Positions 6,700 through 24,531 of a stretch of 64,000 nucleotides of DNA are shown piece after piece; within the stretch, counting starts at the first letter, position 1; every line of letters begins with the position of its first letter. The translations under genes and the position numbers were made by a program. Where the stretch lies: IMG/VR virus record IMGVR_UViG_3300029258_003221, positions 124,001 through 188,000 of that record; one strand, given 5' to 3'. The notes beneath the pieces are model-generated. The model searched no databases. It saw only the letters and a program-made list of their open reading frames with translations, and was not told the origin of the DNA.

Positions 6700-6735
6700 G
6701 TCCACCGGGACAGGGAGCCAACTGTCCCGGTGGAC
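6700..6735 (-). terminator. strong intergenic hairpin
   Basis: 14-bp perfect stem GTCCACCGGGACAG/CTGTCCCGGTGGAC whose 3' arm runs into GACACCT; no U-tract. Confidence 0.45.
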
Positions 6736-6752
6736 TCACCACCAACCCACAC

Positions 6753-7043
6753 TCACATATTAAACCATTTGCCGCTGATGGCATCAGCGTATCGTTCCCC
6801 AGTGTAGTGAGGATCATCGCTGTTTATTTTGCTCCAACCGTAGGTTGTCACGTGCATTCGGTACTGCCCTGACGTGGCTTTGTCCCCTCGTTTGCGTCGT
6901 CGTCGTTCAACAGCGTATCGTTGAATCATCTTGTCAAAGCTGTCGAAGGCGAGTTCAATTTCCCGTGGCTTATCAGGGTCACGTTCCATGTGATTGAATT
7001 GTACCCGCATTGAAAAGCTGACAGTTTGCGGGTGTGTAGTCAT
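6753..7043 (-). CDS. hypothetical protein
   Basis: 96 aa, RBS, preceded by the intergenic module. Confidence 0.7.
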   Translation of the reverse strand: MTTHPQTVSFSMRVQFNHMERDPDKPREIELAFDSFDKMIQRYAVERRRRKRGDKATSGQYRMHVTTYGWSKINSDDPHYTGERYADAISGKWFNM

Positions 7044-7084
7044 TTGTCGTCCTTCCGTTGTTGTTGATGTTGTGTTAGTGGGTG

Positions 7085-7237
7085 TCAGCTTTTGACTTCC
7101 ACCTGTTCTCTTGGGTTGACGAAGAACGTGTTTCCTTTGCTGTCCATAGCTTCATTGTCGCCAGTTTTGATACATTCTCCATTCCAGCAGTGAAACGGGC
7201 GATTCTTGGGCAGTGTGTGAAACTCAACCATTTTCAT
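7085..7237 (-). CDS. hypothetical protein
   Basis: start moved; TGA stop overlaps motif. Confidence 0.6.
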   Translation of the reverse strand: MKMVEFHTLPKNRPFHCWNGECIKTGDNEAMDSKGNTFFVNPREQVEVKS

Positions 7238-7281
7238 GTCGTCCCTCTTAAGGAGTGTTGGTGATGTTGTGTTAGTGGGTG

Positions 7282-7485
7282 TCAGACAAAGCAGGACAGT
7301 GTTTGACTTGGGTGATGAGGTTGAACGGCTTCCCAGCAATTCAGAGCAGGCACCCAGATGCCGCCTGTTGTGTAGTTGGGATTGTCAACGATGAGGAACT
7401 CGGTTGTTCCGTTGTTCTGTCGATCATCGATGACCCAGCCGTGTTTCTCTTCACCGTTGATTGTGTAGAAGGTTTCGTTGTTCAT
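7282..7485 (-). CDS. hypothetical protein
   Basis: 67 aa; TGA stop overlaps motif. Confidence 0.65.
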   Translation of the reverse strand: MNNETFYTINGEEKHGWVIDDRQNNGTTEFLIVDNPNYTTGGIWVPALNCWEAVQPHHPSQTLSCFV

Positions 7486-7504
7486 GGCTCTTTACAGGGT
7501 GTCG

Positions 7505-7630
7505 TCAAGCAGCCCGACGTTCGTATTTCTTTTCCCGTCGTTTAGCTCTTTCCCTGTCCTTTTTTCTTCCTTGTTCACGTTTCTGGCGACGGCGATCTCT
7601 GTCGTGTCCCGTCTCTTCTCTGATGTACAT
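7505..7630 (-). CDS. 41-aa highly basic peptide ending RRAA (not in ORF track)
   Basis: manual translation MYIREETGHDRDRRRQKREQGRKKDRERAKRREKKYERRAA*; ATG directly follows GACACCC. Confidence 0.6.
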   Translation of the reverse strand: MYIREETGHDRDRRRQKREQGRKKDRERAKRREKKYERRAA

Positions 7631-7692
7631 GGGTGTCTCTTTGAGGGTTTGAAGAATGCCACCGGGATTTGTTCCCGGTGGCGTTAGGTTGT

Positions 7693-8094
7693 TTACGCTG
7701 CTCGCTGTGCGGCGAGTTCGGCGTCGGCCTGTTCCATTCCCAGCAGTACCAGAGCCGGGATATTAGTTTGTCCACCTTCCATGTGTTTGAAGGACTCGCA
7801 GAATTCATCCCATTCCCTTGCCGACCGGATAGGCACATCATTGCCGTATCGTGGTTTTTCGTACCATTCGGCGATATTAGGCCCACGTCTCTTGTGGCTG
7901 AACTTCACCGTATCCCCTCGTTTGGTGACACAAACAAAGGTGTTGTCAGTGAAAGTGATTCGATAGCCACCGGGAACCATTGTTTCCTTGAGTTCCCCTT
8001 TCTTGTTGGTTGTCATGATCGGAATCCAGTTTCGCTTTGCTTCTTTGATTCCGATTGGCTTACACGGTTTCAGTGTTTTGATGGCCTGCACCAT
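7693..8094 (-). CDS. hypothetical protein (C-terminal QRAA)
   Basis: 133 aa, GGGAG RBS. Confidence 0.75.
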   Translation of the reverse strand: MVQAIKTLKPCKPIGIKEAKRNWIPIMTTNKKGELKETMVPGGYRITFTDNTFVCVTKRGDTVKFSHKRRGPNIAEWYEKPRYGNDVPIRSAREWDEFCESFKHMEGGQTNIPALVLLGMEQADAELAAQRAA

Positions 8095-8144
8095 GATCGT
8101 CTCCCTGTTAGGAAAGTGTTGTTGATGTTTTGTTATTGGGTGTC

Positions 8145-8303
8145 TTAGGGGACTTCAACCCAATCGGTATAACCTTTGACTCGCCATGCTTCGTTGTAGA
8201 TATCGTCACCATCGTAATTGACAGTCACAACATCGAACTGTTCGAGGATCAGAGTTCGGAAGTAGAGTTTTCCGTTCTCTCGTTTGAATTCCACCGATTC
8301 CAT
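8145..8303 (-). CDS. hypothetical protein
   Basis: start moved to ATG with GGGAG RBS; TAA-GACACCC. Confidence 0.65.
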   Translation of the reverse strand: MESVEFKRENGKLYFRTLILEQFDVVTVNYDGDDIYNEAWRVKGYTDWVEVP

Positions 8304-8341
8304 TGTTTCGTCTCCCGTTGTTGGTAGTCTGTCAGTGGGTG

Positions 8342-8611
8342 TCAGACTCCACAAACTTTGTAGACGAGTTTGGTCCAGAACTTGTAGTCTTTTTCGACGA
8401 GCTGGTCGAAAACTTCCTGACTGGCTTGCATGGCGATGGATTCAAACTGTCCACCAACAACCATTTGTTCTTGCCATTTGCTGTCGGGGAAGGACTCTCG
8501 TTTTTCTTCGGCGATCTTTTTACGACGTTCGTATTCTTTGTCGCCGAGGTTGTTTCTGTGGCGTTGTTCGACTTCATTTTCTGGTGTGATTTCCCATTGA
8601 ACAGCGGACAT
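8342..8611 (-). CDS. hypothetical protein
   Basis: start moved to ATG with GGAGG RBS. Confidence 0.65.
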   Translation of the reverse strand: MSAVQWEITPENEVEQRHRNNLGDKEYERRKKIAEEKRESFPDSKWQEQMVVGGQFESIAMQASQEVFDQLVEKDYKFWTKLVYKVCGV

Positions 8612-8656
8612 GTTCGTCCTCCAGTTGAGTGTTAGTTGTTGATGGTTTGTTAGTGG

Positions 8657-8686
8657 GTGTCCCCCGGCGTTGTTGCCGGGGGACAC
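8657..8686 (-). terminator. hairpin downstream of ParB-like gene
   Basis: 12-bp stem GTGTCCCCCGGC/GCCGGGGGACAC whose 3' arm overlaps GACACCC. Confidence 0.45.
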
Positions 8687-8696
8687 GGTTCGTTGG

Positions 8697-9542
8697 TTAT
8701 GCAGCCCGTCGTCGGTTTCCGATGTTGTAGACCTGTTCCATTGCTGCAAAGCAGGCACTTCGGTTTGGTCGGTCGGTATCGTCTCGACAGGAGTTCTGTG
8801 CAATTCGGAATATCTCCGCAGCGGATCGTCGTCCCAGTCGATCTTTGATATCTTCAATTGAGGCGTCACCATAGGCTCTGATGAAATCAACCAGTCCTCT
8901 CAAGAACCCATTGCCACCAGCTTGGTATTCAAGCCCTCGCTTGCTCCTCCACAAACTGAGAATTTCAAACAGTTCGTTGAGAATGTCATGTGAATACGCT
9001 TCGGTAAGGGGTGTCAGAGACCGGATATCTGCCGTTCTGGTGTTGAATCCGGGAGTGTTGGGGATTGAAAATCCCCATTGTGTCAAGCCGTCTTCGATAT
9101 CGACAGCAAAAGGATATTCAGCTTCCAATGCTGCTGAAAATGCGTCCCAGACATTCATTCGACGACTGTTCTGAGTCAGTTCGTGGAAGATTGCAGCACA
9201 AGTTGCTTTGTTGACTCCGAAGTGGATTTCGCAAGTGATGTACTTTTGATGTTCCATCATTTCCATCATCCACAATGTGTGTCGTCCATCAATGGGTAGC
9301 AACTTTCCTTTGACATAGACTAAGATTGGATTTCTCACAGCCCGTCGATTGAAACTGTCTTTGAGTTCCAAGCTGTGCGACTTCACGTGGTCACGGAAGT
9401 TGTAGTTGTTGTTCTTTCCCAACTCGATTTTTTCTCTGTCTACCAGACAGAGATAAGCCAAGCTGGTAAGCTTGCAAAAACATTTTTCAATTCCTGCTTT
9501 GTGGTGTGTTTTTGCCAGTTTCTTAGGCTTAAAATTGTCCAC
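8697..9542 (-). CDS. ParB/Srx-like N-terminal domain protein (DUF6551-like)
   Basis: 281 aa; NPILV...PIDGRHTL motif followed by a helical domain; ends RRRAA. Confidence 0.65.
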   Translation of the reverse strand: MDNFKPKKLAKTHHKAGIEKCFCKLTSLAYLCLVDREKIELGKNNNYNFRDHVKSHSLELKDSFNRRAVRNPILVYVKGKLLPIDGRHTLWMMEMMEHQKYITCEIHFGVNKATCAAIFHELTQNSRRMNVWDAFSAALEAEYPFAVDIEDGLTQWGFSIPNTPGFNTRTADIRSLTPLTEAYSHDILNELFEILSLWRSKRGLEYQAGGNGFLRGLVDFIRAYGDASIEDIKDRLGRRSAAEIFRIAQNSCRDDTDRPNRSACFAAMEQVYNIGNRRRAA

Positions 9543-9610
9543 GTTTACTCTCCCCGAGTGTTAGAAAATGTTTTGAGCGTTGTTTGCTCACTGCCCTATC
9601 GCCGGGTGTC

Positions 9611-9649
9611 AAAAACATCACCCCCGACAACCCGGTATTGTCGGGGGTG
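9611..9649 (-). terminator. intrinsic terminator
   Basis: 12-bp stem CACCCCCGACAA/TTGTCGGGGGTG, then ATGTTTTT, then GACACCC. Confidence 0.6.
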
Positions 9650-9680
9650 TAAAAATATTTTCTTGTAAAAAGCGACTCAT

Positions 9681-9899
9681 TCAACAGAACCCTGCTGTAT
9701 AGAATCGTAGACGCTTGTCTTTTGGGCCGATTGGCAGTATCATTTCGACTACCACATCAGCCAGTTTGTTCGGCGGCGGTTTACCGCTGTACCGGGCAAA
9801 GTAGAATATCAGAAATGCAAACATCATTGCTCCAGTTTCAGGAAGAACCCAGACCTCCCTGTTTAGCACAGGGCACCCCGATTTCGTGCTCCTAGTCAC
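9681..9899 (-). CDS. hypothetical protein
   Basis: 72 aa ORF filling a gap; weak RBS. Confidence 0.35.
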   Translation of the reverse strand: MTRSTKSGCPVLNREVWVLPETGAMMFAFLIFYFARYSGKPPPNKLADVVVEMILPIGPKDKRLRFYTAGFC

Positions 9900-9957
9900 T
9901 CACAACGAACTGGACTAGCTGGGCGGGCGTTGTTTCGATGAGTTGTTAGTGGGTGTC

Positions 9958-10365
9958 TTACTCAACCCGGTCGTGGACTGAGATTGGTGCAGTGTAGTTA
10001 ATGTCATCATGCACCATTGCATTAGTGGTGCTGATGTAGCTGCCACCAGCCATGACGTGTTTGCCATTGCGAATTGCTCCGACCCACTTGGCGGCATAGG
10101 GGTTATCGAGACTTGGCGGTCCTGATCGTGGCAGGCAGAGGATCAGACTGTCATTGGTCAGGAAGTGACAACCTTTGACAATCTCTCTCACCTGACCATA
10201 TCTGGGCAGATTTCCATCGACATAGACACGCCAGACATTGATTGAGTCTCTTCGGCGGGTGATGCCATCATTGGTGCAGTCGTGGTGATTGATCAGCACC
10301 GTCATTCGGTGAACATGGGCACTGCATCGTTGTGCAATTGTTGGATTGGTCGTGGCGATTGTCAT
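9958..10365 (-). CDS. hypothetical protein
   Basis: 135 aa, GGGGAGAG RBS; TAA-GACACCC. Confidence 0.75.
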   Translation of the reverse strand: MTIATTNPTIAQRCSAHVHRMTVLINHHDCTNDGITRRRDSINVWRVYVDGNLPRYGQVREIVKGCHFLTNDSLILCLPRSGPPSLDNPYAAKWVGAIRNGKHVMAGGSYISTTNAMVHDDINYTAPISVHDRVE

Positions 10366-10420
10366 TGTCTCTCCCCAGAGAAATGTTTTGTTGTTGATGG
10401 TTGGTTACTGGGTGTCAGAT

Positions 10421-10560
10421 TGGAGATGGAGGGACTCGAACCCTCGTCCAAACTTATCACGTTATCCCAAACACGAGCGAAACATGGGCCTTTTCTCGTT
10501 GTCGCCTACCCTATAGCGGCGACTGTTCAGCGTGATAGCCTGTCAATACCATTCATCCCC
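10421..10560 (-). ncRNA. miniature tmRNA-like RNA (tRNA-like domain only, 140 nt)
   Basis: 5' GGGGAUG-AAUGGUAUUGAC and 3' GGAC-GAGGG-UUCGAGU-CCCUC-CAUCUCC-A; acceptor stem with G3.U70 and A73; no D-stem; helix 2 present; no room for an MLD or pseudoknots. Confidence 0.8.
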
Positions 10561-10576
10561 GAAAGAGTTAACTGTG

Positions 10577-10652
10577 ACACGGCCACCACCACGTTGGCGC
10601 TCCTCGTGACCGTGCCCCCGGTTACTTAACGCCCTACCCTGCCACAACCGGG
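10577..10652 (-). ncRNA. candidate structured RNA (two hairpins with complementary loops)
   Basis: stems CCCGGUU/AACCGGG and GCACGGUCAC/GUGGCCGUGU; loops GGCGUU and AGCGCC can pair. Confidence 0.35.
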
Positions 10653-10713
10653 TGCATCAGGGATTCAGGCCTAGTTGACTTGCCTTTGCCAGAGGCTTAT
10701 TGGAGCGGCTTTG

Positions 10714-11178
10714 TTACGCTGTTACTGGGTGTCGGACAACACACTCAACACCGGCTTTGTCGCAGATGCCTTTGAGTAGTTCGAGCCAGTTTGGTTGTTT
10801 GTTGAAGATATCCCCGTCGATTCCGAAGATTACTTCTTTCCCATCGTTGTACTCTTCCGAACTTGATCGGATTGCGTAATTACGATCCACAATCCACATG
10901 TGTGGTGTTCGGCTTGACTTCGTTGCCAGTTTACCGGGTGTCCTCAGATAGCACATATGATCGTCACCGAACAAATGTGCATCACTAGAAACCTTGACAC
11001 GAGCCAGATTGAGCCCAATGCCCATTAGTCGTTGACGAATCAGATGCAGCAGGTGAATTTCAGCTCCCCAACCATGAACATGGCGGGTGTATCCACTTGC
11101 CGTAGCTTTTTGGTCGGTGTCCTCTTTCTGGACAACGAGTGTTCCTGAGTCTTTGAACAGATTGAACTTGATTTTCAT
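10714..11178 (-). CDS. hypothetical protein
   Basis: start moved to ATG with GGGGAGA RBS. Confidence 0.75.
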   Translation of the reverse strand: MKIKFNLFKDSGTLVVQKEDTDQKATASGYTRHVHGWGAEIHLLHLIRQRLMGIGLNLARVKVSSDAHLFGDDHMCYLRTPGKLATKSSRTPHMWIVDRNYAIRSSSEEYNDGKEVIFGIDGDIFNKQPNWLELLKGICDKAGVECVVRHPVTA

Positions 11179-11220
11179 TGTTTCTCCCCATGAGCGTTGT
11201 TGATGAATTGTCAACGGGTG

Positions 11221-11403
11221 TCATCGAGGGATGAGCCAGACCACTACCCCGCATTGTGAGGACACAAGATAATCAGTCAGGTGCCACAATTTGAGACGAT
11301 CTTCGTGCTGTTGATCCACCACAACCGAAACTGCATTAGTTTCGGTTGTGGGAGTAGTGGCTTTGATGCCGGTCTTTTCAGACCATTGTTTGAGTTTCAT
11401 CAC
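11221..11403 (-). CDS. hypothetical protein
   Basis: 60 aa, coupled to upstream stop. Confidence 0.6.
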   Translation of the reverse strand: MMKLKQWSEKTGIKATTPTTETNAVSVVVDQQHEDRLKLWHLTDYLVSSQCGVVVWLIPR

Positions 11404-11795
11404 TTTCCCCGAAGTTTGTCGGCTTGTCGAACTAAACCCATGACGGGTGTCATCGGCCAGTTAACTCCCTGTTCCATCAGCCAGAATCGGGCTTCAGGTT
11501 CATCATTGAGGAATCGTTCAAATGCCCAGATTGGCATACGATCATCGGTCGGCGTTGACCGCATGACAGCATAAATCAGAACTTTGAAGTTGTCTTTTGC
11601 TACCTGTTCATCGGGTGTCTCGGCTGACTCACCGACAACTGGCCAATAACAACCGTAACCTGCAAGAAAGCCACGTGCGTTATCATCATCATTGAGCCAG
11701 TTGGTGAAGTTGACAATCGGCAGGACTGGAGGATCAAATCCACAATCCATGACCAAGTGATTTCCCAACTCCATCAAGATCTTTTTCAGGTTCAT
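11400..11795 (-). CDS. hypothetical protein
   Basis: 131 aa, GGGGAGAG RBS. Confidence 0.75.
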   Translation of the reverse strand: MNLKKILMELGNHLVMDCGFDPPVLPIVNFTNWLNDDDNARGFLAGYGCYWPVVGESAETPDEQVAKDNFKVLIYAVMRSTPTDDRMPIWAFERFLNDEPEARFWLMEQGVNWPMTPVMGLVRQADKLRGK

Positions 11796-11964
11796 TTTTC
11801 TCTCCCCAAATCAGTGCATTGTTCGTTGTGACCTGTCTGACACTTGTTTCTTGGGTGTCAACAGGTTTGACGTGGGCATAGCCCGGTGGGCTGTGCAGCA
11901 CTTGCCCAATGAGTTTGGGATAGTTCACCCGGTTAAACTCATTGTTGACTACCAGAAATGTCAT
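11734..11964 (-). CDS. hypothetical protein
   Basis: 76 aa, AGGAG RBS; overlaps next gene. Confidence 0.5.
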   Translation of the reverse strand: MTFLVVNNEFNRVNYPKLIGQVLHSPPGYAHVKPVDTQETSVRQVTTNNALIWGEKNEPEKDLDGVGKSLGHGLWI

Positions 11965-12287
11965 GATGACTCCTTGGGTGTCAGCAATGGGAGGAGTGCA
12001 GCGTATTCTTCGCTATTCTCATAGAAATACTCGGTTGTCTTGAGAGTTCCTTCCCAGACAACCACCTGATTGTACTCAGTCAGACCGACAGCGTAGATTC
12101 TGCCGTCATCACCGTCCACCAGAATCATATTCTGATGGTAGGTAGTAAACTTTGGTTTGCCGGTTGTAGTGCGACCGACACGAGAGCCACGTTTGTTGGT
12201 TTCGACGAAGAATTTCGCCGTAACACGTTTGCGACCATGAGGCCAATCTTCGATTGTTGCCTCAGTACGTGGATTACTGAACTTCAT
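11961..12287 (-). CDS. hypothetical protein
   Basis: start moved to ATG with GGGGAGAG RBS. Confidence 0.75.
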   Translation of the reverse strand: MKFSNPRTEATIEDWPHGRKRVTAKFFVETNKRGSRVGRTTTGKPKFTTYHQNMILVDGDDGRIYAVGLTEYNQVVVWEGTLKTTEYFYENSEEYAALLPLLTPKESS

Positions 12288-12333
12288 TGTTCTCTCCCCA
12301 GAGAAGTTGTTTTGATGTTTTGTTAGTGGGTGT

Positions 12334-12516
12334 CTAAGGTTTGGCGATACCACGTTCCCGTAGGACAGTATCAGCATCAACACCACGTTTGGCGAGTTCT
12401 TCCCGTGCCTCATAGTACAGGCTCAGGTCTTTCCCGTTAGCACCGAGATCAGCAGTAGCCTCTTTTTCGAGGACGTTCTCAACCTGCCATGTTTTCAGCG
12501 ATGAACAGTAACTCAT
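12334..12516 (-). CDS. hypothetical protein
   Basis: start moved; GGGGAG RBS. Confidence 0.65.
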   Translation of the reverse strand: MSYCSSLKTWQVENVLEKEATADLGANGKDLSLYYEAREELAKRGVDADTVLRERGIAKP

Positions 12517-12776
12517 TGTTTTCTCCCCAGAGTTTTTTCCCATTTGATGGGTGTCATAACCAGCCGAAACATTCGGCCATTTTCTTTTTCGACAAACAGG
12601 ACAAAGTTTCCTTTGTCGTCTGTTTCTGATCCTTTTATGATCCCGATATTATCCAGCCACGTTGACATGGATTCTTCAGGAATAATCGAATCAATTTCAG
12701 CCTGAATCAGGTCGGAAAATGCTTTTGTGACTTTCCGACGCTGATTGGCTTCTTTCCGGGTGTCAGACTTCGACAT
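12513..12776 (-). CDS. hypothetical protein
   Basis: 87 aa, coupled to neighbours. Confidence 0.65.
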   Translation of the reverse strand: MSKSDTRKEANQRRKVTKAFSDLIQAEIDSIIPEESMSTWLDNIGIIKGSETDDKGNFVLFVEKENGRMFRLVMTPIKWEKTLGRKQ

Positions 12777-13107
12777 GATAAAACGCTCTGTCGATTTCTT
12801 TCACGGTGTAGGCGTTGTGCAATTCATTTGCCAACTGTTCCACCAAATCTCGGGCATTACGGTGCAGAACTCCACTGGAGTTTGCCCAACTAGACCCATT
12901 GTCGTTTGACCATTTGCGACCGAGCAGTCGGGCGACGTGTCCGCTGATGTTGGTCAGGGTGTTTCCATCCATGACCATGACAGCGAAATATTTCTTTTCC
13001 GGGTGTCGTCGTCCGTAGTCAATTCGCATTGTGTAGATCGTGGTTCCCAGATCACACAGTCGTTCCAGACGTTTCCGAGCGTTTGCGATTCGTTCAGCGT
13101 TATCCAT
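12763..13107 (-). CDS. hypothetical phage protein
   Basis: coupled ORF in operon. Confidence 0.7.
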   Translation of the reverse strand: MDNAERIANARKRLERLCDLGTTIYTMRIDYGRRHPEKKYFAVMVMDGNTLTNISGHVARLLGRKWSNDNGSSWANSSGVLHRNARDLVEQLANELHNAYTVKEIDRAFYHVEV

Positions 13108-13414: not shown

Positions 13415-13433
13415 TGATCTCTCCCAAGGTGTC

Positions 13434-13497
13434 AAAAATGAGACGGCGACAGCCTACCCCGTGGGCACCGTTACTGGCTACTGGACTGCCCCGTCTC
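13434..13497 (-). terminator. long hairpin plus U-tract (terminator or small RNA)
   Basis: GAGACGG-GGCAGTC/GGCTGTC-G-CCGTCTC, then ATTTTT, then GACACCT. Confidence 0.5.
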
Positions 13498-13598
13498 GTG
13501 CAGTACGTTACAGGGTGTCCAATAACACCAACCCGGATAAAGGCCAAATAAGCCTTCGCTCAACTATAGTGCCATCCTTTAACCGGGTCGGCTAAATG

Positions 13599-15525: not shown

Positions 15526-15610
15526 AGTCACTCTCCCAAAAAGAAAACTTTTGTTTTGGCGATTGTTCGCCACTGTCCCATCATAGGGTGTCCACTTTTA
15601 CTCCCAGCGA

Positions 15611-15946
15611 TCAGGAAGTAAGAGTCCAAGGCCGATGGGTAGCCTCGATTCCTTGATTGTCACGAATTTCACGATGATCCTCATCCAGCATATTCGTGAT
15701 AGTATTGCAGTCTCCTCGTGTCAGGTGACCATCCAGCGTCCCTTGAACAATGAATGTCGCTGTGACTGCCGGATGTCGGCGGGACAGATTCTGAATCACA
15801 GCAACATAGTTTTTGTTGTGCCAATCAGCGATCAAATTACTCACTGATCGGTCGATGACTTCGTTGTACTCAGGTGTCACACTTACTCTCCTGATATTTG
15901 GCCCACAGCAGCGGGCATTCGGTTGCCAGCCATTCCAACACGTCAC
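15611..15946 (-). CDS. hypothetical protein (true start probably nearer 15877)
   Basis: ORF in operon. Confidence 0.55.
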   Translation of the reverse strand: MTCWNGWQPNARCCGPNIRRVSVTPEYNEVIDRSVSNLIADWHNKNYVAVIQNLSRRHPAVTATFIVQGTLDGHLTRGDCNTITNMLDEDHREIRDNQGIEATHRPWTLTS

Positions 15947-16658
15947 TCAGTGTTCCCGTCTGAGAACTAGCGTGAGTTGCAACAGCGTTGTATTCGTCTT
16001 GCCATTGTTCGGGTGTCGCACCCCATCCAATGCAAAGACCATCTTCCCGCATTCCGTACTGTCGATCCTCAGCATCCTGACGAATGTTCTCAATGTCTGA
16101 TTCCACAGCGGCAATGAACTCCAGACTGTCAACAGTTACACCGTGTCGAGCAGCCACTTCTTTGGCAATGCCTTCCAGCTTCTGTCGTTTCTCAGCCTGT
16201 TGCCTTGCTTCGTGGGTTTCCGGGGTGTCCACTCGTTGAACGATGGCAACACCACAGTTGTACTCAAACAGAGTTTGAAACAGCTCCAAACCATTTTCAT
16301 TTGGAATGCGGGTATCGATCAGAAGATACTTCAGGCAATCCTCATCAAGATTGAAGACAAATTCCTTTGCCATGGCGGCAACGTCACAAGTCTTGTAATA
16401 CCGACGATCACCGTACAAATCAGGATCGTCGTTAATCATGGTGACCACGATAGTGGGAATGCCCACACGCTCAATAATCGTGGAAACATATTTTTCCATT
16501 CGCTGCTTGCGAAAGGCACAAAGTGCGGCCTGTCCATAACCTTCGCCGATGAATTCAAGCATGTCGTTCATTTTGTCTCTCCCGAAACAACTTTTGTATT
16601 TGTCACTGTCTGCTTGATGGGTGTCAGCTAACTCCCTGACCGTTGGGAGTGTTGTCAC
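15870..16658 (-). CDS. hypothetical protein
   Basis: 262 aa, GTG start just downstream of a promoter. Confidence 0.75.
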   Translation of the reverse strand: MTTLPTVRELADTHQADSDKYKSCFGRDKMNDMLEFIGEGYGQAALCAFRKQRMEKYVSTIIERVGIPTIVVTMINDDPDLYGDRRYYKTCDVAAMAKEFVFNLDEDCLKYLLIDTRIPNENGLELFQTLFEYNCGVAIVQRVDTPETHEARQQAEKRQKLEGIAKEVAARHGVTVDSLEFIAAVESDIENIRQDAEDRQYGMREDGLCIGWGATPEQWQDEYNAVATHASSQTGTLSDVLEWLATECPLLWAKYQESKCDT

Positions 16659-16664
16659 ATCCTT

Positions 16665-16693
16665 ATCCTACGGAGTAAGGAGTTAGCTGTAAA
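16665..16693 (-). promoter_or_regulatory. sigma70-type promoter, probably leaderless transcript
   Basis: TTTACA-N17-TAGGAT, 6 nt upstream of the GTG start; AT-rich tract upstream. Confidence 0.55.
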
Positions 16694-16725
16694 GCAGGTT
16701 CAGGAAAAATTCAGCAAAATTTCTG

Positions 16726-17091
16726 TCAGGTTTCTGCGATTTTGCTCTTGAACTCATCAATTCCATAGCAAAGCATTGATCTGTTATCACGATCTACCTT
16801 GCGGTATTTCTCCAGAGCATCTTCGGAGATTTCTTCCCATCCATTGGCCATGCACAGGTAGTATTTGCCCTCAACATGAGCAACGTCACCCATACTGACA
16901 GAGCAAAACGGCTTTGACTGAAACATGTTCTGCCCGTAGTGGAAAATGCGTTCCAGCAGGGCAAACACGTCTTTCTTGCCGTCCGTAGTACAGGCGTAGA
17001 CTTCACTTTCCGGGATATCAACCGGACGAATCTTTTCCACATCCTCAAAAGCCAGCATGTGGACCTTGAATGTAAGGTTAGCCATCTTCAC
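16726..17091 (-). CDS. YodL-like domain protein
   Basis: LERIFHYGQN...SVSMGDVAHVEGKYYLC..NGW resembles the YodL pattern. Confidence 0.6.
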   Translation of the reverse strand: MKMANLTFKVHMLAFEDVEKIRPVDIPESEVYACTTDGKKDVFALLERIFHYGQNMFQSKPFCSVSMGDVAHVEGKYYLCMANGWEEISEDALEKYRKVDRDNRSMLCYGIDEFKSKIAET

Positions 17092-17309
17092 TCTCCCAAG
17101 TGTTCTTTGGTGATTGTTGTTGTCACTCTCTTGCCTATTGTCAGGGTGTCGCCAACCTTGAATACTGATGTGGCGTCCTCTAACAACTGATCGGCAGACA
17201 ATGGAGTTCCATTCACTTTGACAGCTTTATGAGAAACTGCTCGACGACTTTCGGCCATCGAGCAGAACTCAAATTGCATCAAAAATTGGTTAACTTTCAT
17301 CAGACTCAT
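17088..17309 (-). CDS. stand-alone S4-like RNA-binding protein
   Basis: SMAESRRAVSHKAVKVNG...GDTLTIGKR fits the S4 consensus (TyrRS C-terminal type). Confidence 0.65.
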   Translation of the reverse strand: MSLMKVNQFLMQFEFCSMAESRRAVSHKAVKVNGTPLSADQLLEDATSVFKVGDTLTIGKRVTTTITKEHLGE

Positions 17310-17853
17310 TCTGACATAATTCAGAACAGTAACACTCTCGATGCCAGTCTTCGTCGGTGTCCTCAAATGCCTCATGACAATTCAGACAGATTTCAACTGA
17401 TGGTGTGAAGTGATGTTGTTCGGCACAATACTCTGAGCAACAATCATACTCGCCGGTATCAGCGTTGCCGTATTTGTTCTTGCCGAGAAAATCTCCACAC
17501 TGAGCACACTTGGGTAAGTTCTCGTCGAACTCCTTAGCCCCAGCGATAAGAGTGTTGTAGGTGTCCTCATTGGCTGGTTCACAGTCCAATGGCATACTTG
17601 TGCCATGTGTAAACCCACAACCAATGTGGATTTCCTCGTCAGAATCAGCCTGCCATGCCTTGGCAATGGAAATTGCTGTTTCAACTGCTTCGGTCATGTT
17701 GGTGAATGTCTCAAATTCACCAACATATTTTTTGACCAGAGCATCAGGGCCGGTGTAATCAATGCCACCCTGAGTGATTTCGACAGTCGGGTGTTCTTCA
17801 CCCCAGCGTTTCTGTCGTGTAACGGTAAACTCATTGACTGCGATAGTCATCAT
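17290..17853 (-). CDS. hypothetical protein with C-terminal Cys-rich (Zn finger-like) repeats
   Basis: CAQC...CCSEYC and CLNC...YCSELC. Confidence 0.75.
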   Translation of the reverse strand: MMTIAVNEFTVTRQKRWGEEHPTVEITQGGIDYTGPDALVKKYVGEFETFTNMTEAVETAISIAKAWQADSDEEIHIGCGFTHGTSMPLDCEPANEDTYNTLIAGAKEFDENLPKCAQCGDFLGKNKYGNADTGEYDCCSEYCAEQHHFTPSVEICLNCHEAFEDTDEDWHRECYCSELCQNESDES

Positions 17854-17891
17854 AACACTCTCCCAAGTGAACAGGTTGTTTGAACAACTCG

Positions 17892-18089
17892 TTACCGGGT
17901 GTCGTGTTCCTTACGAACCTTCCGGTAGCATTCAATAAATTCAGCGTCAAATGAAGAACGCCATCCACAGCGGCAACGAAACTGATTCCCATCCCACTCT
18001 GTTCGTGGATGACCTTTACGACAACCATCACTCCCACAGTAAGGGGAGTATCCCGGTCGTGTCAGAAGATTCTTACGAACAATGCTCAT
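17892..18089 (-). CDS. small Cys-rich protein
   Basis: PYCG..C..PR....QF.C.CGW. Confidence 0.7.
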   Translation of the reverse strand: MSIVRKNLLTRPGYSPYCGSDGCRKGHPRTEWDGNQFRCRCGWRSSFDAEFIECYRKVRKEHDTR

Positions 18090-18442
18090 ATCAGTTCATC
18101 AATCTTCTTAACTTCGATTCGGGTGTCATCTTCAGCCCAGCACAATCCACTGTGAAGGACAGCACACAAATCGCCGTCATCATTCCGGCGACATTCATGC
18201 ACACGCCCAGACACTGGGAACTTCACGATGTAACGCTGTTCATCGCCAAACTTGTTGATTTCGTTTTTCTGGCAGAAGTCAACCAGAGTCTGGCCTTCCT
18301 CCAACATGCCGAGATAATTTGCCCTTACACCTTCAGTGTTCTTGATGGCAGTCGGCACGGCCTGTTCAGGTGCGTCACAATCGACTTTCGCAACCCAGCG
18401 ATTCGCTGAATTGACGTATATTGCTACGACGTAGGTGTTCAT
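18086..18442 (-). CDS. hypothetical protein
   Basis: 118 aa, coupled, RBS. Confidence 0.7.
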   Translation of the reverse strand: MNTYVVAIYVNSANRWVAKVDCDAPEQAVPTAIKNTEGVRANYLGMLEEGQTLVDFCQKNEINKFGDEQRYIVKFPVSGRVHECRRNDDGDLCAVLHSGLCWAEDDTRIEVKKIDELI

Positions 18443-18726
18443 CTCTCTCCCAAACCTTTCATGGTGTCATCTTCACCAAGATAGCGAACATCACCAATAT
18501 CAGCGGTGTCAGCTTCGTAGTCTCTGACTAATTCAAAAGCAGCAGTAACTACACGATGTTGGTCGTAAGCTTCTGAGAAGTTAGATGGCATACAGGATGA
18601 CATTCCAACAGTCCACCCGTCACCATAATTGGCCAAAAGAACAACATCATAAGGAGTGTTTTTATTGTCTGTGTAACCACGAACTTCAACACCAGTTGTG
18701 CCTGCTTTTTTCAGTTCGACTTTCAT
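18439..18726 (-). CDS. hypothetical protein
   Basis: 95 aa, ATGA coupling. Confidence 0.7.
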   Translation of the reverse strand: MKVELKKAGTTGVEVRGYTDNKNTPYDVVLLANYGDGWTVGMSSCMPSNFSEAYDQHRVVTAAFELVRDYEADTADIGDVRYLGEDDTMKGLGER

Positions 18727-18899
18727 CGTCGGTTCTTCTTCCTGTTTTGTCGTGCCCGTTTCTTGGCTGCACGATTTTTTCGTTTGATTGATCGTTCTTC
18801 AGGTGAAGTGAAGTAACCTCTTCGTGATGGTTGATCAGGTGTCATCGACCCCAAAGCAATCATCCCCATTGTCAACATCGCCATGTCCCGTTGATTCAT
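18723..18899 (-). CDS. small protein with basic C-terminus
   Basis: start moved; KRKNRAAKKRARQNRKKNRR tail. Confidence 0.6.
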   Translation of the reverse strand: MNQRDMAMLTMGMIALGSMTPDQPSRRGYFTSPEERSIKRKNRAAKKRARQNRKKNRR

Positions 18900-19176
18900 C
18901 TGTTTTCCTTTCTCCAATTTCACAACCAACCAGCAATGCCGACAGCATATTGCCCGAAGATTCTTGAACACGTTTGAGTTCATCTCGGACAGCAGCACCA
19001 CAAGCATCACTTACTATCTTTGCTGACTGAACGATTATTTCTGCATGCTTTTCACAGCGAGCAGCCAGTCGATCCAGTCCCAAATGTCTGGCTGATTCAG
19101 CGGTGTCACGAAGTGAATAAGCAATGTCATTGAATTGCTCGTGCATTTCGTAAACGACGTTAATCATTTCTTTCAT
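18835..19176 (-). CDS. hypothetical protein
   Basis: 113 aa. Confidence 0.65.
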   Translation of the reverse strand: MKEMINVVYEMHEQFNDIAYSLRDTAESARHLGLDRLAARCEKHAEIIVQSAKIVSDACGAAVRDELKRVQESSGNMLSALLVGCEIGERKTDESTGHGDVDNGDDCFGVDDT

Positions 19177-19242
19177 CAGACATTTCCTGTTTTAAGCCAA
19201 CCACCCATGCAGAATTGCAGAGGGGTGGCGGCGGGGAGAGTT

Positions 19243-19557
19243 TCAAACCGTGCCAGCAATTGCTGACACGGTGGGGAGAGTACCATCGTGTACCACGAAT
19301 TCCTCAATGTTCTTGTCTTCAATTCGGTGATAGGTGTCACTCACTGGGATAGTGACATAAACTCTGCCACCAGCTTCAACTGTGATATTATCCTCAGTGA
19401 TCTGCACCACCTTTGCCTTGAGTCTGTCGGCTCTTTTCTTCGCCACTCCCAGACGGCGATAAGTTTTTACGCAGGTGTTTGTACTTCCCCAATTAGCGAA
19501 ACTTCGCCAACGGTTATCACGACACATACGCATGCCGTCTTTGATTAGAAAAATCAT
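19243..19557 (-). CDS. hypothetical protein
   Basis: 104 aa, coupled. Confidence 0.7.
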   Translation of the reverse strand: MIFLIKDGMRMCRDNRWRSFANWGSTNTCVKTYRRLGVAKKRADRLKAKVVQITEDNITVEAGGRVYVTIPVSDTYHRIEDKNIEEFVVHDGTLPTVSAIAGTV

Positions 19558-19883
19558 TTCCAGCTCCCTGCATCAAGTTTCAATTCTTTCCGAATTAGCT
19601 TCAACGCAGTCTCAATGTGGGTGTCATGCAACGTCACTCCATTGTCGTCGTATGACTGGAAATTTTCGTCGTGAGGAACCAAACGAACCCACGTTCCATT
19701 CGCAAAACATGGATGATTGTCGTTGTACTGCAACTGATTTGTCAGTTTGTGGTACAATGCCCACATGAGTTGACAGCCATTTCGATCCTCAGCGAAGTCA
19801 CGACAATTCTGCGGCCCCAGATGATCCGCAATAGTACGAATCCCGTTTTTCAACTGTTCGTACCGGACTTGTGACATTTTCAT
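19554..19883 (-). CDS. hypothetical protein
   Basis: 109 aa, GGGGAGAG RBS. Confidence 0.7.
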   Translation of the reverse strand: MKMSQVRYEQLKNGIRTIADHLGPQNCRDFAEDRNGCQLMWALYHKLTNQLQYNDNHPCFANGTWVRLVPHDENFQSYDDNGVTLHDTHIETALKLIRKELKLDAGSWK

Positions 19884-20281
19884 TACTCTCTCCCCAAGTT
19901 TCTGTGATCACCACCACACAGGTAACAACCGTCAAGTCTGTCACACTCTTCAGGTGTCCACGGTGAGTCACACTGAATCACCTCAGTCTCTACTGCCTTG
20001 ATCGCCACAATCTGTGCGGCCTCATAAGCATCAGACAAAGGATTCGGACCCATGTTATCTCGATGGCAATAATACCAGATATCGAGATAGTCAGCCTTCG
20101 GCATGACAACACGGACAATACACGACGGAGCCGGATCAGGATATTCTCCTGTGTCGGAGTAATCATTGGGACAGGTGTCACCCCAATCCGGCTCCGTGTC
20201 CACACGACAGTCTACGGCATTTCTTGCACAATCCAAAACCGCACCGTCGCCGTAGTAGCTGATATATCGTTCGACGTTCAT
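19883..20281 (-). CDS. hypothetical protein
   Basis: start moved; GGGAGAG RBS. Confidence 0.7.
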   Translation of the reverse strand: MNVERYISYYGDGAVLDCARNAVDCRVDTEPDWGDTCPNDYSDTGEYPDPAPSCIVRVVMPKADYLDIWYYCHRDNMGPNPLSDAYEAAQIVAIKAVETEVIQCDSPWTPEECDRLDGCYLCGGDHRNLGRE

Positions 20282-20324
20282 CACTCTCTCCCCTAAAGTT
20301 GTGTTGATGAACAAATATCAGGTG

Positions 20325-20717
20325 TCAAACAGCAGCCATCTTCATGTAAAGAACAACCTGCTGAGCACTCATTTTGTAAACCTTGCCGTTCGACACGCTC
20401 TTCACCAGAATCGGATACTTTTTGGCACGAGTATTCGCACCAATGATCTCGAACGTGTCATTGCCGTTGCTGATCTCTTTTCCAAGATCATCAGGGGACA
20501 GACCCCACAGAACAGCATTTCGCTTGAAAGTTTCGCCGTCCTTCGTGTTCACTGAACCATCAGAGTTTTCAGTTCCAACTTCCAGCTTGAACGTGGCTGT
20601 TGTGTGATTGAATGAAGCACGACCAACATCAATTTTCACACCATCAAAGTCCAGATGTTCATCCAGAGCTGACTGGATGGCGTCACGAAGTTCACGTACT
20701 TTTGCCCTGTCAAACAT
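20325..20717 (-). CDS. phage-type hypothetical protein
   Basis: start moved; GGGAG RBS; TGA overlaps motif variant. Confidence 0.75.
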   Translation of the reverse strand: MFDRAKVRELRDAIQSALDEHLDFDGVKIDVGRASFNHTTATFKLEVGTENSDGSVNTKDGETFKRNAVLWGLSPDDLGKEISNGNDTFEIIGANTRAKKYPILVKSVSNGKVYKMSAQQVVLYMKMAAV

Positions 20718-20766
20718 TTGATTCTCCCTGTTGAAAAGAATTGTCTTACACCCAACTGTCAGGGTG

Positions 20767-21015
20767 TCAAACTTGAACAAGCAACCAGTAATGTGGCGTT
20801 GAATGATTGCAGTTAACAGTAGTCTTTTTAGGACGGTATGTCAGCCAACCGCCCACAGACCAGCCCAGATAAAAACCCATCAGACATTTGCTGCGACCTT
20901 CAGCCAATAGCTTTCGGTCGTAGATTTCAGTGTCTTCAGGCAATTGTTCGCCTGCGGTTATCTCTCGATAACCATCAGGGCAAGGCCACTGTTTCCGAAC
21001 TTGACTCTTCGCCAT
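20767..21015 (-). CDS. hypothetical protein
   Basis: 82 aa, GGGAGAG RBS. Confidence 0.65.
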   Translation of the reverse strand: MAKSQVRKQWPCPDGYREITAGEQLPEDTEIYDRKLLAEGRSKCLMGFYLGWSVGGWLTYRPKKTTVNCNHSTPHYWLLVQV

Positions 21016-21029
21016 TTGACTCTCCCAAA

Positions 21030-21242
21030 TCAGGTGTCAACAAAAAACACTTTGGCGGTCAAAGTGAGATCCTCCAACAGTTCAGTACAAACACCATTCC
21101 TGCCGATGTTTTTGTCGTCCCACTGAACCCACACAAATCCATCAAGATCCTTTGCCCCATCTTCTGGTGGGTCAATAACACGACCACCACAGGGACGAGA
21201 TTTGCTTTGATTTAGAACTACTGTGCCGGGTCCAATTTTCAT
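21030..21242 (-). CDS. hypothetical protein
   Basis: 70 aa, coupled. Confidence 0.65.
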   Translation of the reverse strand: MKIGPGTVVLNQSKSRPCGGRVIDPPEDGAKDLDGFVWVQWDDKNIGRNGVCTELLEDLTLTAKVFFVDT

Positions 21243-21706
21243 CAGTCTAACCCCAATGCTTCACGTCCAACAAACTTGCCTTCGGTGAAACCAAGTGAAT
21301 ACAGAATGTCCGATGCCAGAGTGTTGCCGACTTCATAGTCACACTCTTCATCACCTTCGATCCATTCGGTGTCCTCACACAACCGTCTGAGGAATACTGG
21401 AAAACTCTCCGGGCTGATATCACAGTCAAGAGTGGTCGCCAGCACCAGCTTGTCGCCAGTCTTCCAGTATTTGGTGTCAGATGTCGCAGTGATAGACCGC
21501 TCACCGTTGCTGAATGAATCCCCACGGGCAGGAACATAGCAAGCCTGCAATCGACTATCGATGCCGATGTTCACCATCTTAGTGGCTACTCGGGCTTCAT
21601 CCTCACAGGTGATGCTCATGGTGAAATTCTCACCAGCACATGCCCTGATGATATCATCGTACTGGTACGTGTAACCGTTGCAGAAAAGCTGTCGTGTGTC
21701 GTCCAT
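21242..21706 (-). CDS. hypothetical protein
   Basis: start moved; GGGAGAG RBS. Confidence 0.7.
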   Translation of the reverse strand: MDDTRQLFCNGYTYQYDDIIRACAGENFTMSITCEDEARVATKMVNIGIDSRLQACYVPARGDSFSNGERSITATSDTKYWKTGDKLVLATTLDCDISPESFPVFLRRLCEDTEWIEGDEECDYEVGNTLASDILYSLGFTEGKFVGREALGLD

Positions 21707-21752
21707 CGTTTCTCTCCCAGATAAGGTTGTTGATGACAATTTACTGGGTGTC

Positions 21753-21796
21753 AAATAAAAAAGGCACCCGGTGACTAACATCATCACCGGGTGCCT
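21753..21796 (-). terminator. intrinsic terminator after ParB-like gene
   Basis: 13-bp stem AGGCACCCGGTGA/TCACCGGGTGCCT plus TTTTTATTT, then GACACCC. Confidence 0.75.
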
Positions 21797-24525: not shown

Positions 24526-24531
24526 GGTGTC

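What the first reader, a model, noticed from the sequence alone, without database searches (positions are those of the whole stretch)
6700..21796. Heptamer directly follows terminators or is built into hairpins
Seen: three hairpin plus U-tract elements (9611-9649, 13434-13497, 21753-21796) run straight into TTTGACACC. Two strong hairpins end in the motif (6700-6735, 8657-8686). One presents it as stem plus ACCC loop (14449-14482). The mini-tmRNA 3' end lies 4 nt before a copy. Inference: downstream genes need re-initiation or read-through at these points. I see no sigma70 -10 at the proper distance from the TTGACA so formed, so the motif may itself be an initiation, antitermination or RNA-processing signal.
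Basis: partly seen in the sequence, partly recalled or inferred. Interest (0 to 1): 0.6.

Follow-up and report, generated by a model that had tools for sequence, protein, structure and literature searches.

The report
Phage sigma-type promoter, one per gene
The repeated "heptamer" is the core (GACACC) of a compact promoter that a huge uncultivated phage most likely uses with its own sigma factor to start transcription before almost every gene of an ~80-kb one-directional block; the hairpin and terminator association applies only to a minority of copies.

Summary
The window lies in a 234.6-kb fragment of a huge phage. The true core is the hexamer GACACC. It occurs 195 times on the minus strand and 5 times on the plus strand of the contig. 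In the unidirectional gene block it occurs 186 times in sense and once in antisense, against about 20 expected. The extended consensus is tGACACC-C-A-N-T-A-A, then N5, then Y and A, often continuing TCAACAAC. It peaks 35-50 nt before start codons. Synonymous codon choice maintains it inside genes, and it is avoided elsewhere in both orientations. It is conserved in relatives: 68:0 and 80:0 copies, and 74% of aligned copies are kept against 26% of all hexamers. More distant relatives carry different one-strand motifs with the same geometry (TGATACCAACTAG; ATCTGTACCTAATTGGGCA). In each case a sigma-70-family gene sits near the head of the motif block. Best reading: an extended -10-type promoter (-18 to -7, +1 = A) for host RNA polymerase carrying the phage sigma. 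Strong hairpins precede only 8 of 57 intergenic copies, as terminator-promoter junctions. No RNA data could be obtained.

The parts
4299..64000 (-). Part of the unidirectional block of small genes (genome 128.3 to about 206 kb) that carries the GACACC promoter-like motif in sense orientation. The block continues beyond the window.
   Evidence: Gene layout. Motif counts: 186 sense and 1 antisense in the block, against about 20 expected.
21747..21797 (-). Terminator-promoter junction. A 15-bp hairpin (21761-21797) and a U-tract run into TTTGACACC (21747-21755). The predicted start is the A at 21734, and the leader is ATCAACAAC...GGGAGAG followed by ATG.
   Evidence: -29.7 kcal/mol, z -7.6.
9605..9649 (-). 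Terminator-promoter junction. A 13-bp hairpin (9619-9649) and a U-tract run into TTTGACACC (9605-9613).
   Evidence: -24.9 kcal/mol, z -3.2.
13428..13497 (-). A branched hairpin followed by UUUUU, then TGACACC (13428-13434). The structural significance is weak.
   Evidence: -28.3 kcal/mol, z -1.8.
6697..6735 (-). A strong hairpin whose 3' arm overlaps GGACACC (GACACC at 6697-6702). It has no U-tract. The sequence after it reads TAATAAACATACATCAACAAC.
   Evidence: -32.2 kcal/mol, z -4.9.
8656..8686 (-). A strong hairpin (GTGTCCCCCGGC paired with GCCGGGGGACAC) that ends in GACACC (8656-8661). It is followed by CACTAACAAACCATCAACAAC.
   Evidence: -28.4 kcal/mol, z -6.7.
14449..14482 (-). A hairpin that presents the motif as stem (GGAC) plus loop (ACCC). 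It lies upstream of a small ORF (window 14223-14414); the DUF932 gene lies upstream of the hairpin and ends about 14500.
   Evidence: -36.5 kcal/mol, z -7.7.
10420..10560 (-). A short (141-nt) tmRNA-like gene. The next motif copy (TGACACC at 10411-10417) starts 2-3 nt after its 3' end and most likely drives the next gene (9958-10365).
7043..7087 (-). A typical leader-class copy: TGACACCCACTAACACAACATCAACAACAACGGAAGGACGACAA followed by ATG. GACACC lies at 7081-7086, the predicted +1 is the A at 7068, and the ATG is at 7043.
14500..15525 (-). The DUF932 gene, which carries three internal sense copies (14798, 15032, 15280). Two of them sit at the same codon positions in orthologues that are 79% and 56% identical.

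Best explanation
GACACC is the upstream half of a compact, single-element promoter with no -35 box. In register it reads GACACC (-18 to -13), C-A-N-T-A-A (-12 to -7), five variable bases, a pyrimidine at -1 and an A at +1. The transcript often begins AUCAACAAC and runs into a GGGAGA Shine-Dalgarno sequence and the ATG 22-37 nt later. The proposed cascade is inferred, not shown. First, host-type sigma-70 promoters (TTGCTTTACA-N13-CGTAGAAT) transcribe the upstream early region, including a phage sigma-70-family gene at genome 204,721-205,614 (minus strand). Second, that sigma redirects host RNA polymerase to about 186 co-oriented motif sites in the 128-206 kb block. The result is roughly one start site per small gene, and many sites are embedded in the coding sequence of the preceding gene. 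Hairpins that overlap the hexamer lie in upstream read-through transcripts, not in the transcript the promoter itself makes. Shown here: the statistics, the positional register, the conservation and the synteny. Inferred: that the motif initiates transcription, the exact +1, and that this particular sigma reads it.
For: 1. Strand and region specificity. The contig has 195 minus-strand and 5 plus-strand copies. The block has 186 sense and 1 antisense against about 20 expected.
2. Nucleotide-level selection. In block coding sequence there are 130 copies against 26.6+-4.4 after synonymous shuffling. Asp-Thr is encoded GAC-ACC in 77 of 147 cases (12.4 expected), but in only 6 of 137 cases in the rest of the genome. 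The reverse complement occurs once against 14.4 expected. Outside the block both orientations are depleted (8 against 21.2; 4 against 12.7).
3. Register. There is a sharp peak 35-50 nt before start codons (33 copies against 5.8 expected). Intergenic density is 5.3 per kb against 1.8 per kb in coding sequence. 80% of genes have a copy within 300 nt upstream.
4. Start-site signature. In five independent data sets a pyrimidine sits at index 17 (68-81%) and a purine at index 18 (62-90%), 7 nt after the TAA/TAG triplet.
5. Intragenic copies. Copies deep inside genes share the promoter-like flanks (-0.8 bits against -7.0 for random positions, p 1e-25).
6. Conservation. Relative L090 has 68 sense and 0 antisense copies, and L093 has 80 and 0. 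Between the window and L090 (76% nucleotide identity), 26 of 35 aligned copies are kept against 25.6% of all hexamers. A second conserved peak lies at +1 to +3.
7. Relatives with other motifs and the same layout. G001 has ATACCAACTA 96 times in sense and 0 in antisense, before genes and 16 nt before a tRNA-Lys gene. G005 has CTGTACC...CA, where the A is either the A of the ATG or the first base of an AGGAGG leader.
8. Sigma synteny. The sigma gene sits at the onset of the dense block and has two motif copies and a host-type promoter upstream. Orthologues 47-57% identical are flanked by GACACC in the same way. The 30%-identical orthologue in G001 lies about 9-17 kb upstream of the first copies of G001's own motif block. 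G005 has only a weak, below-cut-off sigma-r2 hit, inside the thin upstream part of its block. The fold model matches full-length sigma factors.
9. No room for another promoter. At three terminator junctions only about 58 nt separate the terminator from the ATG, and sigma-70-like sites are not enriched.
Against: There is no transcript evidence. The link between the sigma and the motif rests on synteny and parallel divergence only. About 19 copies sit 2-6 nt before an ATG (GAGGACACCCAATG), where the predicted +1 falls inside the gene. The regular spacing of copies in the densest part (CV about 0.4) is not required by a simple promoter model. My gene calls are heuristic, although the database gene calls for L090 and L093 give the same picture.
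Confidence: 0.65

Rival explanations
1. The motif is an RNA-level signal. It would be a cleavage site for a sequence-specific endoribonuclease, or a binding site for an RNA-binding protein. It would cut or mark long polycistronic transcripts between cistrons and leave the upstream fragments ending in protective hairpins, much as T7 uses RNase III sites or T4 uses RegB.
For: The motif is on the sense strand only and sits near gene boundaries. It follows strong hairpins at 8 intergenic sites and follows the 3' end of the tmRNA-like gene. Some copies overlap the Shine-Dalgarno to ATG spacer.
Against: An RNA signal gives no reason to purge the reverse complement from the untranscribed strand (1 against 14.4 expected). 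It also gives no reason to deplete both orientations outside the block. The pyrimidine-purine signature at a fixed distance, the -10-like TAA triplet and the sigma synteny would all be unexplained. In G005 the conserved A is either the first base of the ATG or the first base of a leader, which fits a start site rather than a cut site.
Confidence: 0.12
2. The motif is a promoter, but it is read by a host alternative sigma factor or by another phage factor (an activator or appropriator) rather than by the sigma encoded at 204.7-205.6 kb. On this view the lineage-specific motifs reflect different hosts.
For: The relatives that carry different motifs also differ in GC content (35%, 40% and 42-52%), so their hosts may differ. 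Several sigma-like genes exist in the complete relatives. A conserved AAA+ gene always follows the sigma gene.
Against: GACACC is kept across phages with GC contents from 41.5% to 52%. It co-occurs with sigma orthologues that are at least 47% identical, while the 30%-identical orthologue goes with a related but different motif. The sigma gene sits at the onset of the motif block in this phage and in L157; in G001 it lies about 9-17 kb upstream of the first copies.
Confidence: 0.15
3. The motif is a DNA-level orientation signal unrelated to transcription. Candidates are a Chi-like or KOPS-like polar sequence, a primase site (the complement GGTGTC contains the T7 primase site GTGTC), a strand-specific nick site, or a by-product of escape from a Type III restriction enzyme that needs head-to-head sites (as with T7 and EcoP15I).
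For: The strand exclusivity is extreme. Copies are maintained by synonymous codons. Spacing is under-dispersed: few gaps are below 150 nt, and the CV is 0.37-0.47 in L090 and L093.
Against: None of these predicts the fixed register before start codons, the extended consensus with a start-site signature, the restriction to one gene block with depletion elsewhere in both orientations, or the presence of the relatives' motifs in front of tRNA genes. Restriction avoidance explains the missing orientation but not a ninefold excess of the other.
Confidence: 0.05
4. The motif is a promoter for a phage-encoded single-subunit (T7-like) RNA polymerase. The commonest variant, GACACCCACTAAC, resembles the T3 core (CCCTCACTAAAG) and the SP6 core (GTGACACTATAG); that comparison is from memory.
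For: The element is compact and contiguous with no -35 box, and all copies point the same way.
Against: There is no PF00940 hit in this contig or in five relatives (the control genomes lack the family, so this test alone is weak). tblastn with T7 RNA polymerase finds nothing at E<=10 in this contig, in G001 (91% complete), in G005 (complete) or in G002, while the positive control scores 1844 bits. Multisubunit RNA polymerase domains are also absent from this contig. The CAC in CACTAA is poorly conserved.
Confidence: 0.03

Closest known systems
Phage-encoded sigma factors with their own promoter classes (T4 gp55 with the late promoter TATAAATA; SPO1 gp28 with its middle promoters; from established knowledge)
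   Same: A phage sigma-70-family protein redirects host RNA polymerase to a non-host consensus that marks one temporal gene class. As with T4 late promoters, the element is a single -10-region box with no -35 box, and it is often embedded in the preceding gene.
   Different: The consensus (GACACC-CANTAA) is unrelated to those. It extends to -18, like an extended -10 element. There is about one copy per gene (186 copies in about 78 kb), all co-oriented. The protein appears to be a full-length sigma: the fold model aligns over its whole length to sigma factors in holoenzyme structures, unlike the minimal gp55. Function is untested.
PeSL (promoter-early stem-loop) terminator/promoter cassettes of T4-like phages (PMC2839356, PMC4122927)
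   Same: Small composite stem-loop plus promoter units flank small, variable ORFs in hyperplastic regions of T4-related myoviruses. This phage has a T4-like portal and terminase. The three hairpin-plus-U-tract-then-motif junctions look like this.
   Different: PeSLs carry host sigma-70 early promoters, whereas here the promoter is a non-sigma-70 motif. Only 8 of 57 intergenic copies have a strong upstream hairpin. A role in recombination or gene shuffling was not tested.
Per-gene promoter motifs of giant viruses (for example the Mimivirus AAAATTGA early motif; from memory)
   Same: One short motif sits at a fixed distance upstream of a large fraction of genes in a very large viral genome.
   Different: That is a eukaryotic-virus transcription machinery. 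Here the motif is limited to one block, and the enzyme is presumably bacterial RNA polymerase with a sigma factor.
Strand-polar oligomers: Chi, KOPS, and the co-oriented EcoP15I sites of T7 (from established knowledge)
   Same: Near-total strand bias, and maintenance inside coding sequence.
   Different: Those signals show no register with start codons, no start-site signature, and no restriction to one expression block.

Membership tests
Bacterial-type promoter read by a sigma-70-family factor | A sequence element at a fixed distance upstream of a transcription start (pyrimidine at -1, purine at +1, about 7 nt after the -10 element). | tested here: met
   Y at index 17 (68-81%) and R at index 18 (62-90%), 7 nt after TAA/TAG, in this phage, L090, L093, G001 and G005. 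This is a sequence signature only.
Bacterial-type promoter read by a sigma-70-family factor | Located upstream of genes and co-oriented with them, including RNA genes. | tested here: met
   A peak 35-50 nt before start codons (33 against 5.8 expected). 186 sense copies against 1 antisense. The G001 motif lies 16 nt before tRNA-Lys.
Bacterial-type promoter read by a sigma-70-family factor | Primary (5'-triphosphate) transcripts actually start there. | not testable with these tools
Bacterial-type promoter read by a sigma-70-family factor | A cognate sigma factor is encoded or available. | tested here: met
   Sigma70_r2 scores 30.7-32.2 bits against a cut-off of 24, and phrog_351 matches at 2e-14. 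The AlphaFold model (pLDDT 75.6) aligns over its full length to sigma factors in holoenzyme structures, with Foldseek probability 1.0. Whether this sigma is the cognate one is inferred from synteny.
Canonical sigma-70 (-35/-10) promoter | TTGACA, a 16-18 nt spacer, then a TATAAT-like hexamer. | tested here: not met
   No -10 element lies at the proper distance from the fortuitous TTGACA. Sigma-70-like sites are not enriched in 4300-24000 (17 against 19.1). There is no information at -35. A separate true sigma-70-type class (TTGCTTTACA-N13-CGTAGAAT) lies elsewhere in the genome.
PeSL terminator/promoter cassette | A stem-loop immediately followed by an early sigma-70 promoter, flanking variable small ORFs. 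| tested here: not met
   A stem-loop is present at a minority of copies (8 of 57), and the promoter part is not of the sigma-70 type. Only the architecture is analogous.
T7-like single-subunit RNA polymerase promoter | A cognate single-subunit RNA polymerase gene in the phage. | tested here: not met
   There are no PF00940 hits. There are no tblastn hits with T7 RNA polymerase in this contig or in the complete and 91%-complete relatives, while the control is positive. This contig is only 44% complete.
Intrinsic (rho-independent) terminator | A GC-rich hairpin followed directly by a U-tract. | tested here: met
   Met for 21761-21797 and 9619-9649. Weak for 13437-13497. Not met (no U-tract) for 6700-6735, 8657-8686 and 14449-14482.

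The most novel reading that the evidence does not exclude
Beyond acting as ordinary gene-proximal promoters, the roughly 120 intragenic copies are kept by synonymous codon choice and purifying selection at a regular spacing of about 250-350 nt. Together they may form a functional array in their own right. It could be a dense, co-oriented loading track for polymerase carrying the phage sigma, serving for example to sequester host polymerase, to pull the very long genome into the cell by transcription, or to re-engage sigma during elongation and suppress termination. Related huge phages would then have switched motif and sigma specificity together.
Probability: 0.2. Interest if true: 0.75.

Novelty: new member of a known kind. 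Interest (0 to 1): 0.5.

Why it matters
Huge phages of 450-700 kb are known almost only from metagenomes, and how they schedule hundreds of unknown genes is an open question. This analysis gives three things. It gives a concrete, testable promoter consensus with its predicted +1. It gives a candidate cognate sigma factor. It also gives a two-step cascade: host-type promoters express the phage sigma, which then drives the motif block. The block shows an unusual one-promoter-per-gene layout whose copies are written into coding sequence through codon choice. Related phages have swapped the motif while keeping the geometry, which offers a natural series for studying how sigma and promoter specificity co-evolve. 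It may also supply orthogonal sigma-promoter pairs for synthetic biology. In practical terms, the motif marks a temporal gene class and helps define gene starts in genomes where 96% of the block's proteins have no known family.

Tried and rejected
No other route to reads was tried.
- Close relatives in public collections. megablast against the plasmid and phage collections found nothing. A scan of IMG/VR with the extended pattern found only contigs from sample 3300017987 that cover the same region of this phage (the same contig is 99.9% identical).
- Conjugative leading region with single-strand promoters. I considered this because of the DUF932 and ParB-like genes. I dropped it once the contig proved to be a phage, with a T4-like portal, a terminase and baseplate genes.
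- Archaeal virus. I considered this because of a Volactin hit. I dropped it because the contig carries a tmRNA-like gene, a sigma-70-family gene and Shine-Dalgarno sites.
- Phage RNA polymerases. There are no single-subunit hits and no beta or beta-prime domain hits.
- Two-box (ECF-like) promoter model, with GACACC as the -35 element and TCAAC as the -10 element. The spacing is too short, and intragenic copies lack the second box.
- Translation signal. This was rejected because the relatives' motifs also precede tRNA genes, and because the motif lies 35-50 nt upstream of the Shine-Dalgarno sequence.
- Chi, KOPS, primase, nick-site and Type III-avoidance readings. See the rival explanations.
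- Pfam scan of 100 block proteins for a candidate reader. Only 4 had any hit, and none was informative.
- Literature. Searches for GACACC and for huge-phage promoters found no prior description.
- G002 k-mers. The skewed k-mers in G002 turned out to be tandem or coding repeats, not a promoter block.

Full report
**What the window is.** The window is bases 124,001-188,000 of a single 234,631-bp IMG/VR viral contig. The contig has 42% GC and is estimated to be 44% complete. It encodes a T4-like portal interrupted by an intein, a large terminase, baseplate proteins and an intein-bearing actin-like protein. Its terminase belongs to a large family found on contigs of up to 691 kb. The nearest GenBank record is an uncultured 595-kb phage. 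So this is a fragment of an uncultivated huge phage. From window position 4299 onward, and on to the end of the contig, nearly all genes lie on the minus strand and are small, with a median of 114 aa. Of 100 of these proteins scanned against Pfam, 96 have no hit.

**Checking the observation.**
- TTTGACACC occurs 7 times and TGACACC 56 times in the window, always on the minus strand.
- Two of them are good intrinsic terminators that run straight into TTTGACACC: 21761-21797 and 9619-9649.
- The element at 13437-13497 is weaker (z -1.8).
- Three hairpins include the motif in a stem or loop. These carry GGACACC, not TGACACC.
- The mini-tmRNA is supported by Rfam (53.7 bits), and its 3' end lies 2-3 nt before TGACACC.
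- Across the block, strong upstream hairpins accompany only 8 of 57 intergenic copies and 2 of 129 copies inside ORFs. The hairpin link is therefore real but concerns a minority of copies.

**The real unit.** The invariant core is the hexamer GACACC.
- The contig has 195 minus-strand and 5 plus-strand copies. The gene block has 186 sense copies and 1 antisense copy, against about 20 expected for each.
- GACACC is the most over-represented hexamer of the block, and GACACCC is the most over-represented heptamer.
- The flanks carry information from about -8 to +23 relative to the G. There is no G at -8, T at -5, G/T at -3 and -1, and C at +6. T-A-A sits at +9 to +11, a pyrimidine at +17 and an A at +18. 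In many copies the sequence continues TCAACAAC.
- Relative to start codons there is a sharp peak 35-50 nt upstream (33 copies against 5.8 expected). A second class sits 2-6 nt upstream, as GAGGACACCCAATG, where the motif shares bases with the Shine-Dalgarno sequence.
- Intergenic density is 5.3 per kb and coding density is 1.8 per kb, against about 0.18 per kb by chance. 80% of genes have a copy within 300 nt upstream.

**Selection.**
- Inside block coding sequences the hexamer occurs 130 times, against 26.6+-4.4 after synonymous shuffling.
- Asp-Thr dipeptides are written GAC-ACC in 77 of 147 cases (12.4 expected). In the rest of the genome the figure is 6 of 137 (6.8 expected).
- The reverse complement is nearly absent from the block (1 against 14.4 expected).
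- Outside the block both orientations are depleted (8 against 21.2, and 4 against 12.7).
- Copies deep inside genes still match the flank profile (-0.8 bits against -7.0 for random intragenic positions, p 1e-25).
- Spacing is under-dispersed. Few gaps are below 150 nt, and the CV is 0.37-0.47 in the relatives.

**Relatives with the same motif.** Two contigs carry DUF932 orthologues that are 79% and 56% identical to the window's gene. L090 has 52% GC and L093 has 41.5% GC. They show the same pattern: 68 sense and 0 antisense copies in 16.8 kb, and 80 and 0 in 21 kb. Their leader architecture is the same, although the flanking bases differ; L093 prefers GGACACCG. Between the window and L090 (76% nucleotide identity), 26 of 35 aligned copies are conserved, against 25.6% of all hexamers. 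A second conservation peak lies at index 18-20.

**Relatives with other motifs.** More distant members of the terminase family lack any excess of GACACC, but they have blocks of their own.
- G001 (459 kb, 91% complete) has TGATACCAACTAG. The core ATACCAACTA occurs 96 times in sense and 0 in antisense. It lies before genes and 16 nt before a tRNA-Lys gene. A pyrimidine at index 17 (81%) and a purine at index 18 (90%) follow it.
- G005 (572 kb, complete) has ttaatCTGTACCtaattgggCA. The final A is either the A of the ATG, giving a leaderless message, or the first base of an AGGAGG leader.
- Aligned on that start position, all three motif families place TAA or TAG at -9 to -7 and differ upstream of it.

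**A candidate reader.** The contig has one sigma-70-family gene, at genome 204,721-205,614 on the minus strand. Its AlphaFold model aligns over its whole length to sigma factors in holoenzyme structures.
- The gene lies where the dense motif region begins in the direction of transcription.
- Two motif copies precede it, at 205,721 and 205,641.
- A canonical host-type promoter lies upstream, at 207,101.
- That promoter belongs to a separate class, TTGCTTTACA-N13-CGTAGAAT. The class is found mainly in the 207-232 kb region and at a few plus-strand sites.
- Sigma orthologues that are 47-57% identical are flanked by GACACC in the same arrangement. In L157 there are 2 copies in the first 9.4 kb of the locus and 12 (plus 0 antisense) in the remaining 11.5 kb, starting about 600 nt upstream of the sigma gene.
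- The 30%-identical orthologue in G001 lies about 9-17 kb upstream of the first copies of that phage's own motif block.
- G005 has a weak, below-cut-off sigma-r2 hit inside the thin upstream part of its block.
- No single-subunit or multisubunit phage RNA polymerase was found. tblastn with T7 RNA polymerase as query, with a positive control, gave nothing in this contig or in the complete relative.

**Interpretation.** The simplest account of all this is a promoter of the extended -10 type with no -35 element. It reads GACACC (-18 to -13), CANTAA (-12 to -7), five variable bases, a pyrimidine at -1 and an A at +1. Host RNA polymerase carrying the phage sigma would read it. This explains several things:
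- the register before genes;
- the start-site signature;
- the purge of antisense and ectopic copies, which would otherwise cause mistimed or head-on transcription;
- the terminator-motif junctions, where no other promoter has room;
- the parallel divergence of motif and sigma.

The hairpins without U-tracts that overlap the hexamer remain unexplained in detail. They would form only in transcripts that come from upstream.

Promoters for the next gene embedded in a tightly packed genome are the economical answer to the last point. An array function is the more novel possibility.

**Limits.** No reads could be obtained. My gene calls are heuristic, although the database gene calls for the relatives agree with the pattern. 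The genome is incomplete.

Noticed in passing
window 10420-10560 (-): A very short (141-nt) tmRNA-like gene. Rfam RF00023 scores it at 53.7 bits. ARAGORN predicts the tag peptide DNEKRPMFRSCLG. The 3' end lacks an encoded CCA. No SmpB was looked for.
   Followed up: partly
genome 198738, 207101, 213562, 216726, 222084, 226236, 231989 (-) and 2841, 6966, 112394 (+); loci L001, L006, L008-L010: A second, canonical promoter class with a strikingly uniform consensus: TTGCTTTACA-N13-CGTAGAAT(g). It lies mostly upstream of the sigma gene. G001 shares the CGTAGAAT -10 region. These are probably the host-sigma early promoters.
   Followed up: partly
L008:15504-16712 (-), and the equivalent genes in L157, L158 and L159: An AAA+ protein (RuvB_N and AAA domains, with a weak PHROG match to clamp loaders) always directly follows the sigma gene, with a motif copy between them. 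This recalls the T4 late system, which couples a sigma factor to a clamp and clamp loader. The function is untested.
   Followed up: no
L003:6804-9329 (-) and L004:8676-10802 (-): Inteins interrupt the T4-like portal gene. They also interrupt an actin-like (Volactin/MreB-like) gene, where a LAGLIDADG domain is present.
   Followed up: no
L009:10788-12440 (-); L010:10664-11926 (-): The upstream early region encodes a protein with WGR and PARP catalytic domains and a ClpX-like AAA+ protein.
   Followed up: no
window 836-2476 (+) and 2527-4302 (+): Two large plus-strand paralogous proteins with DUF6745 matches end at about window 4300. There they meet the minus-strand block head-on, forming a convergent junction. 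GC content rises from about 41-43% to 48% across it.
   Followed up: no
G004:C1:8397-8894 and 13404-13721 (IMGVR_UViG_3300035698_018317): GGACACCC recurs at intervals of 60-64 nt in two short arrays of a related huge phage. The slightly variable period suggests a CRISPR-like or other interspersed repeat array.
   Followed up: no
G002:C1:1-20000 (IMGVR_UViG_3300042261_002269): About 100 copies of a tandem unit containing ACTTGGACT lie in the first 20 kb of another relative. This is a tandem or coding repeat, not a promoter block.
   Followed up: partly
L092 and L158 (sample 3300017987), against L012 and L080 (the same sample): The sample that holds contigs nearly identical to this phage also holds a second, related phage (DUF932 79% identical, sigma 57% identical) that uses the same GACACC motif.
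   Followed up: partly
G001:C1:319752-319830 and 333836-333900: The G001 motif is followed by tRNA-like sequences with T-loop or D-loop signatures that ARAGORN did not call. They may be degenerate or intron-containing tRNA genes.
   Followed up: no
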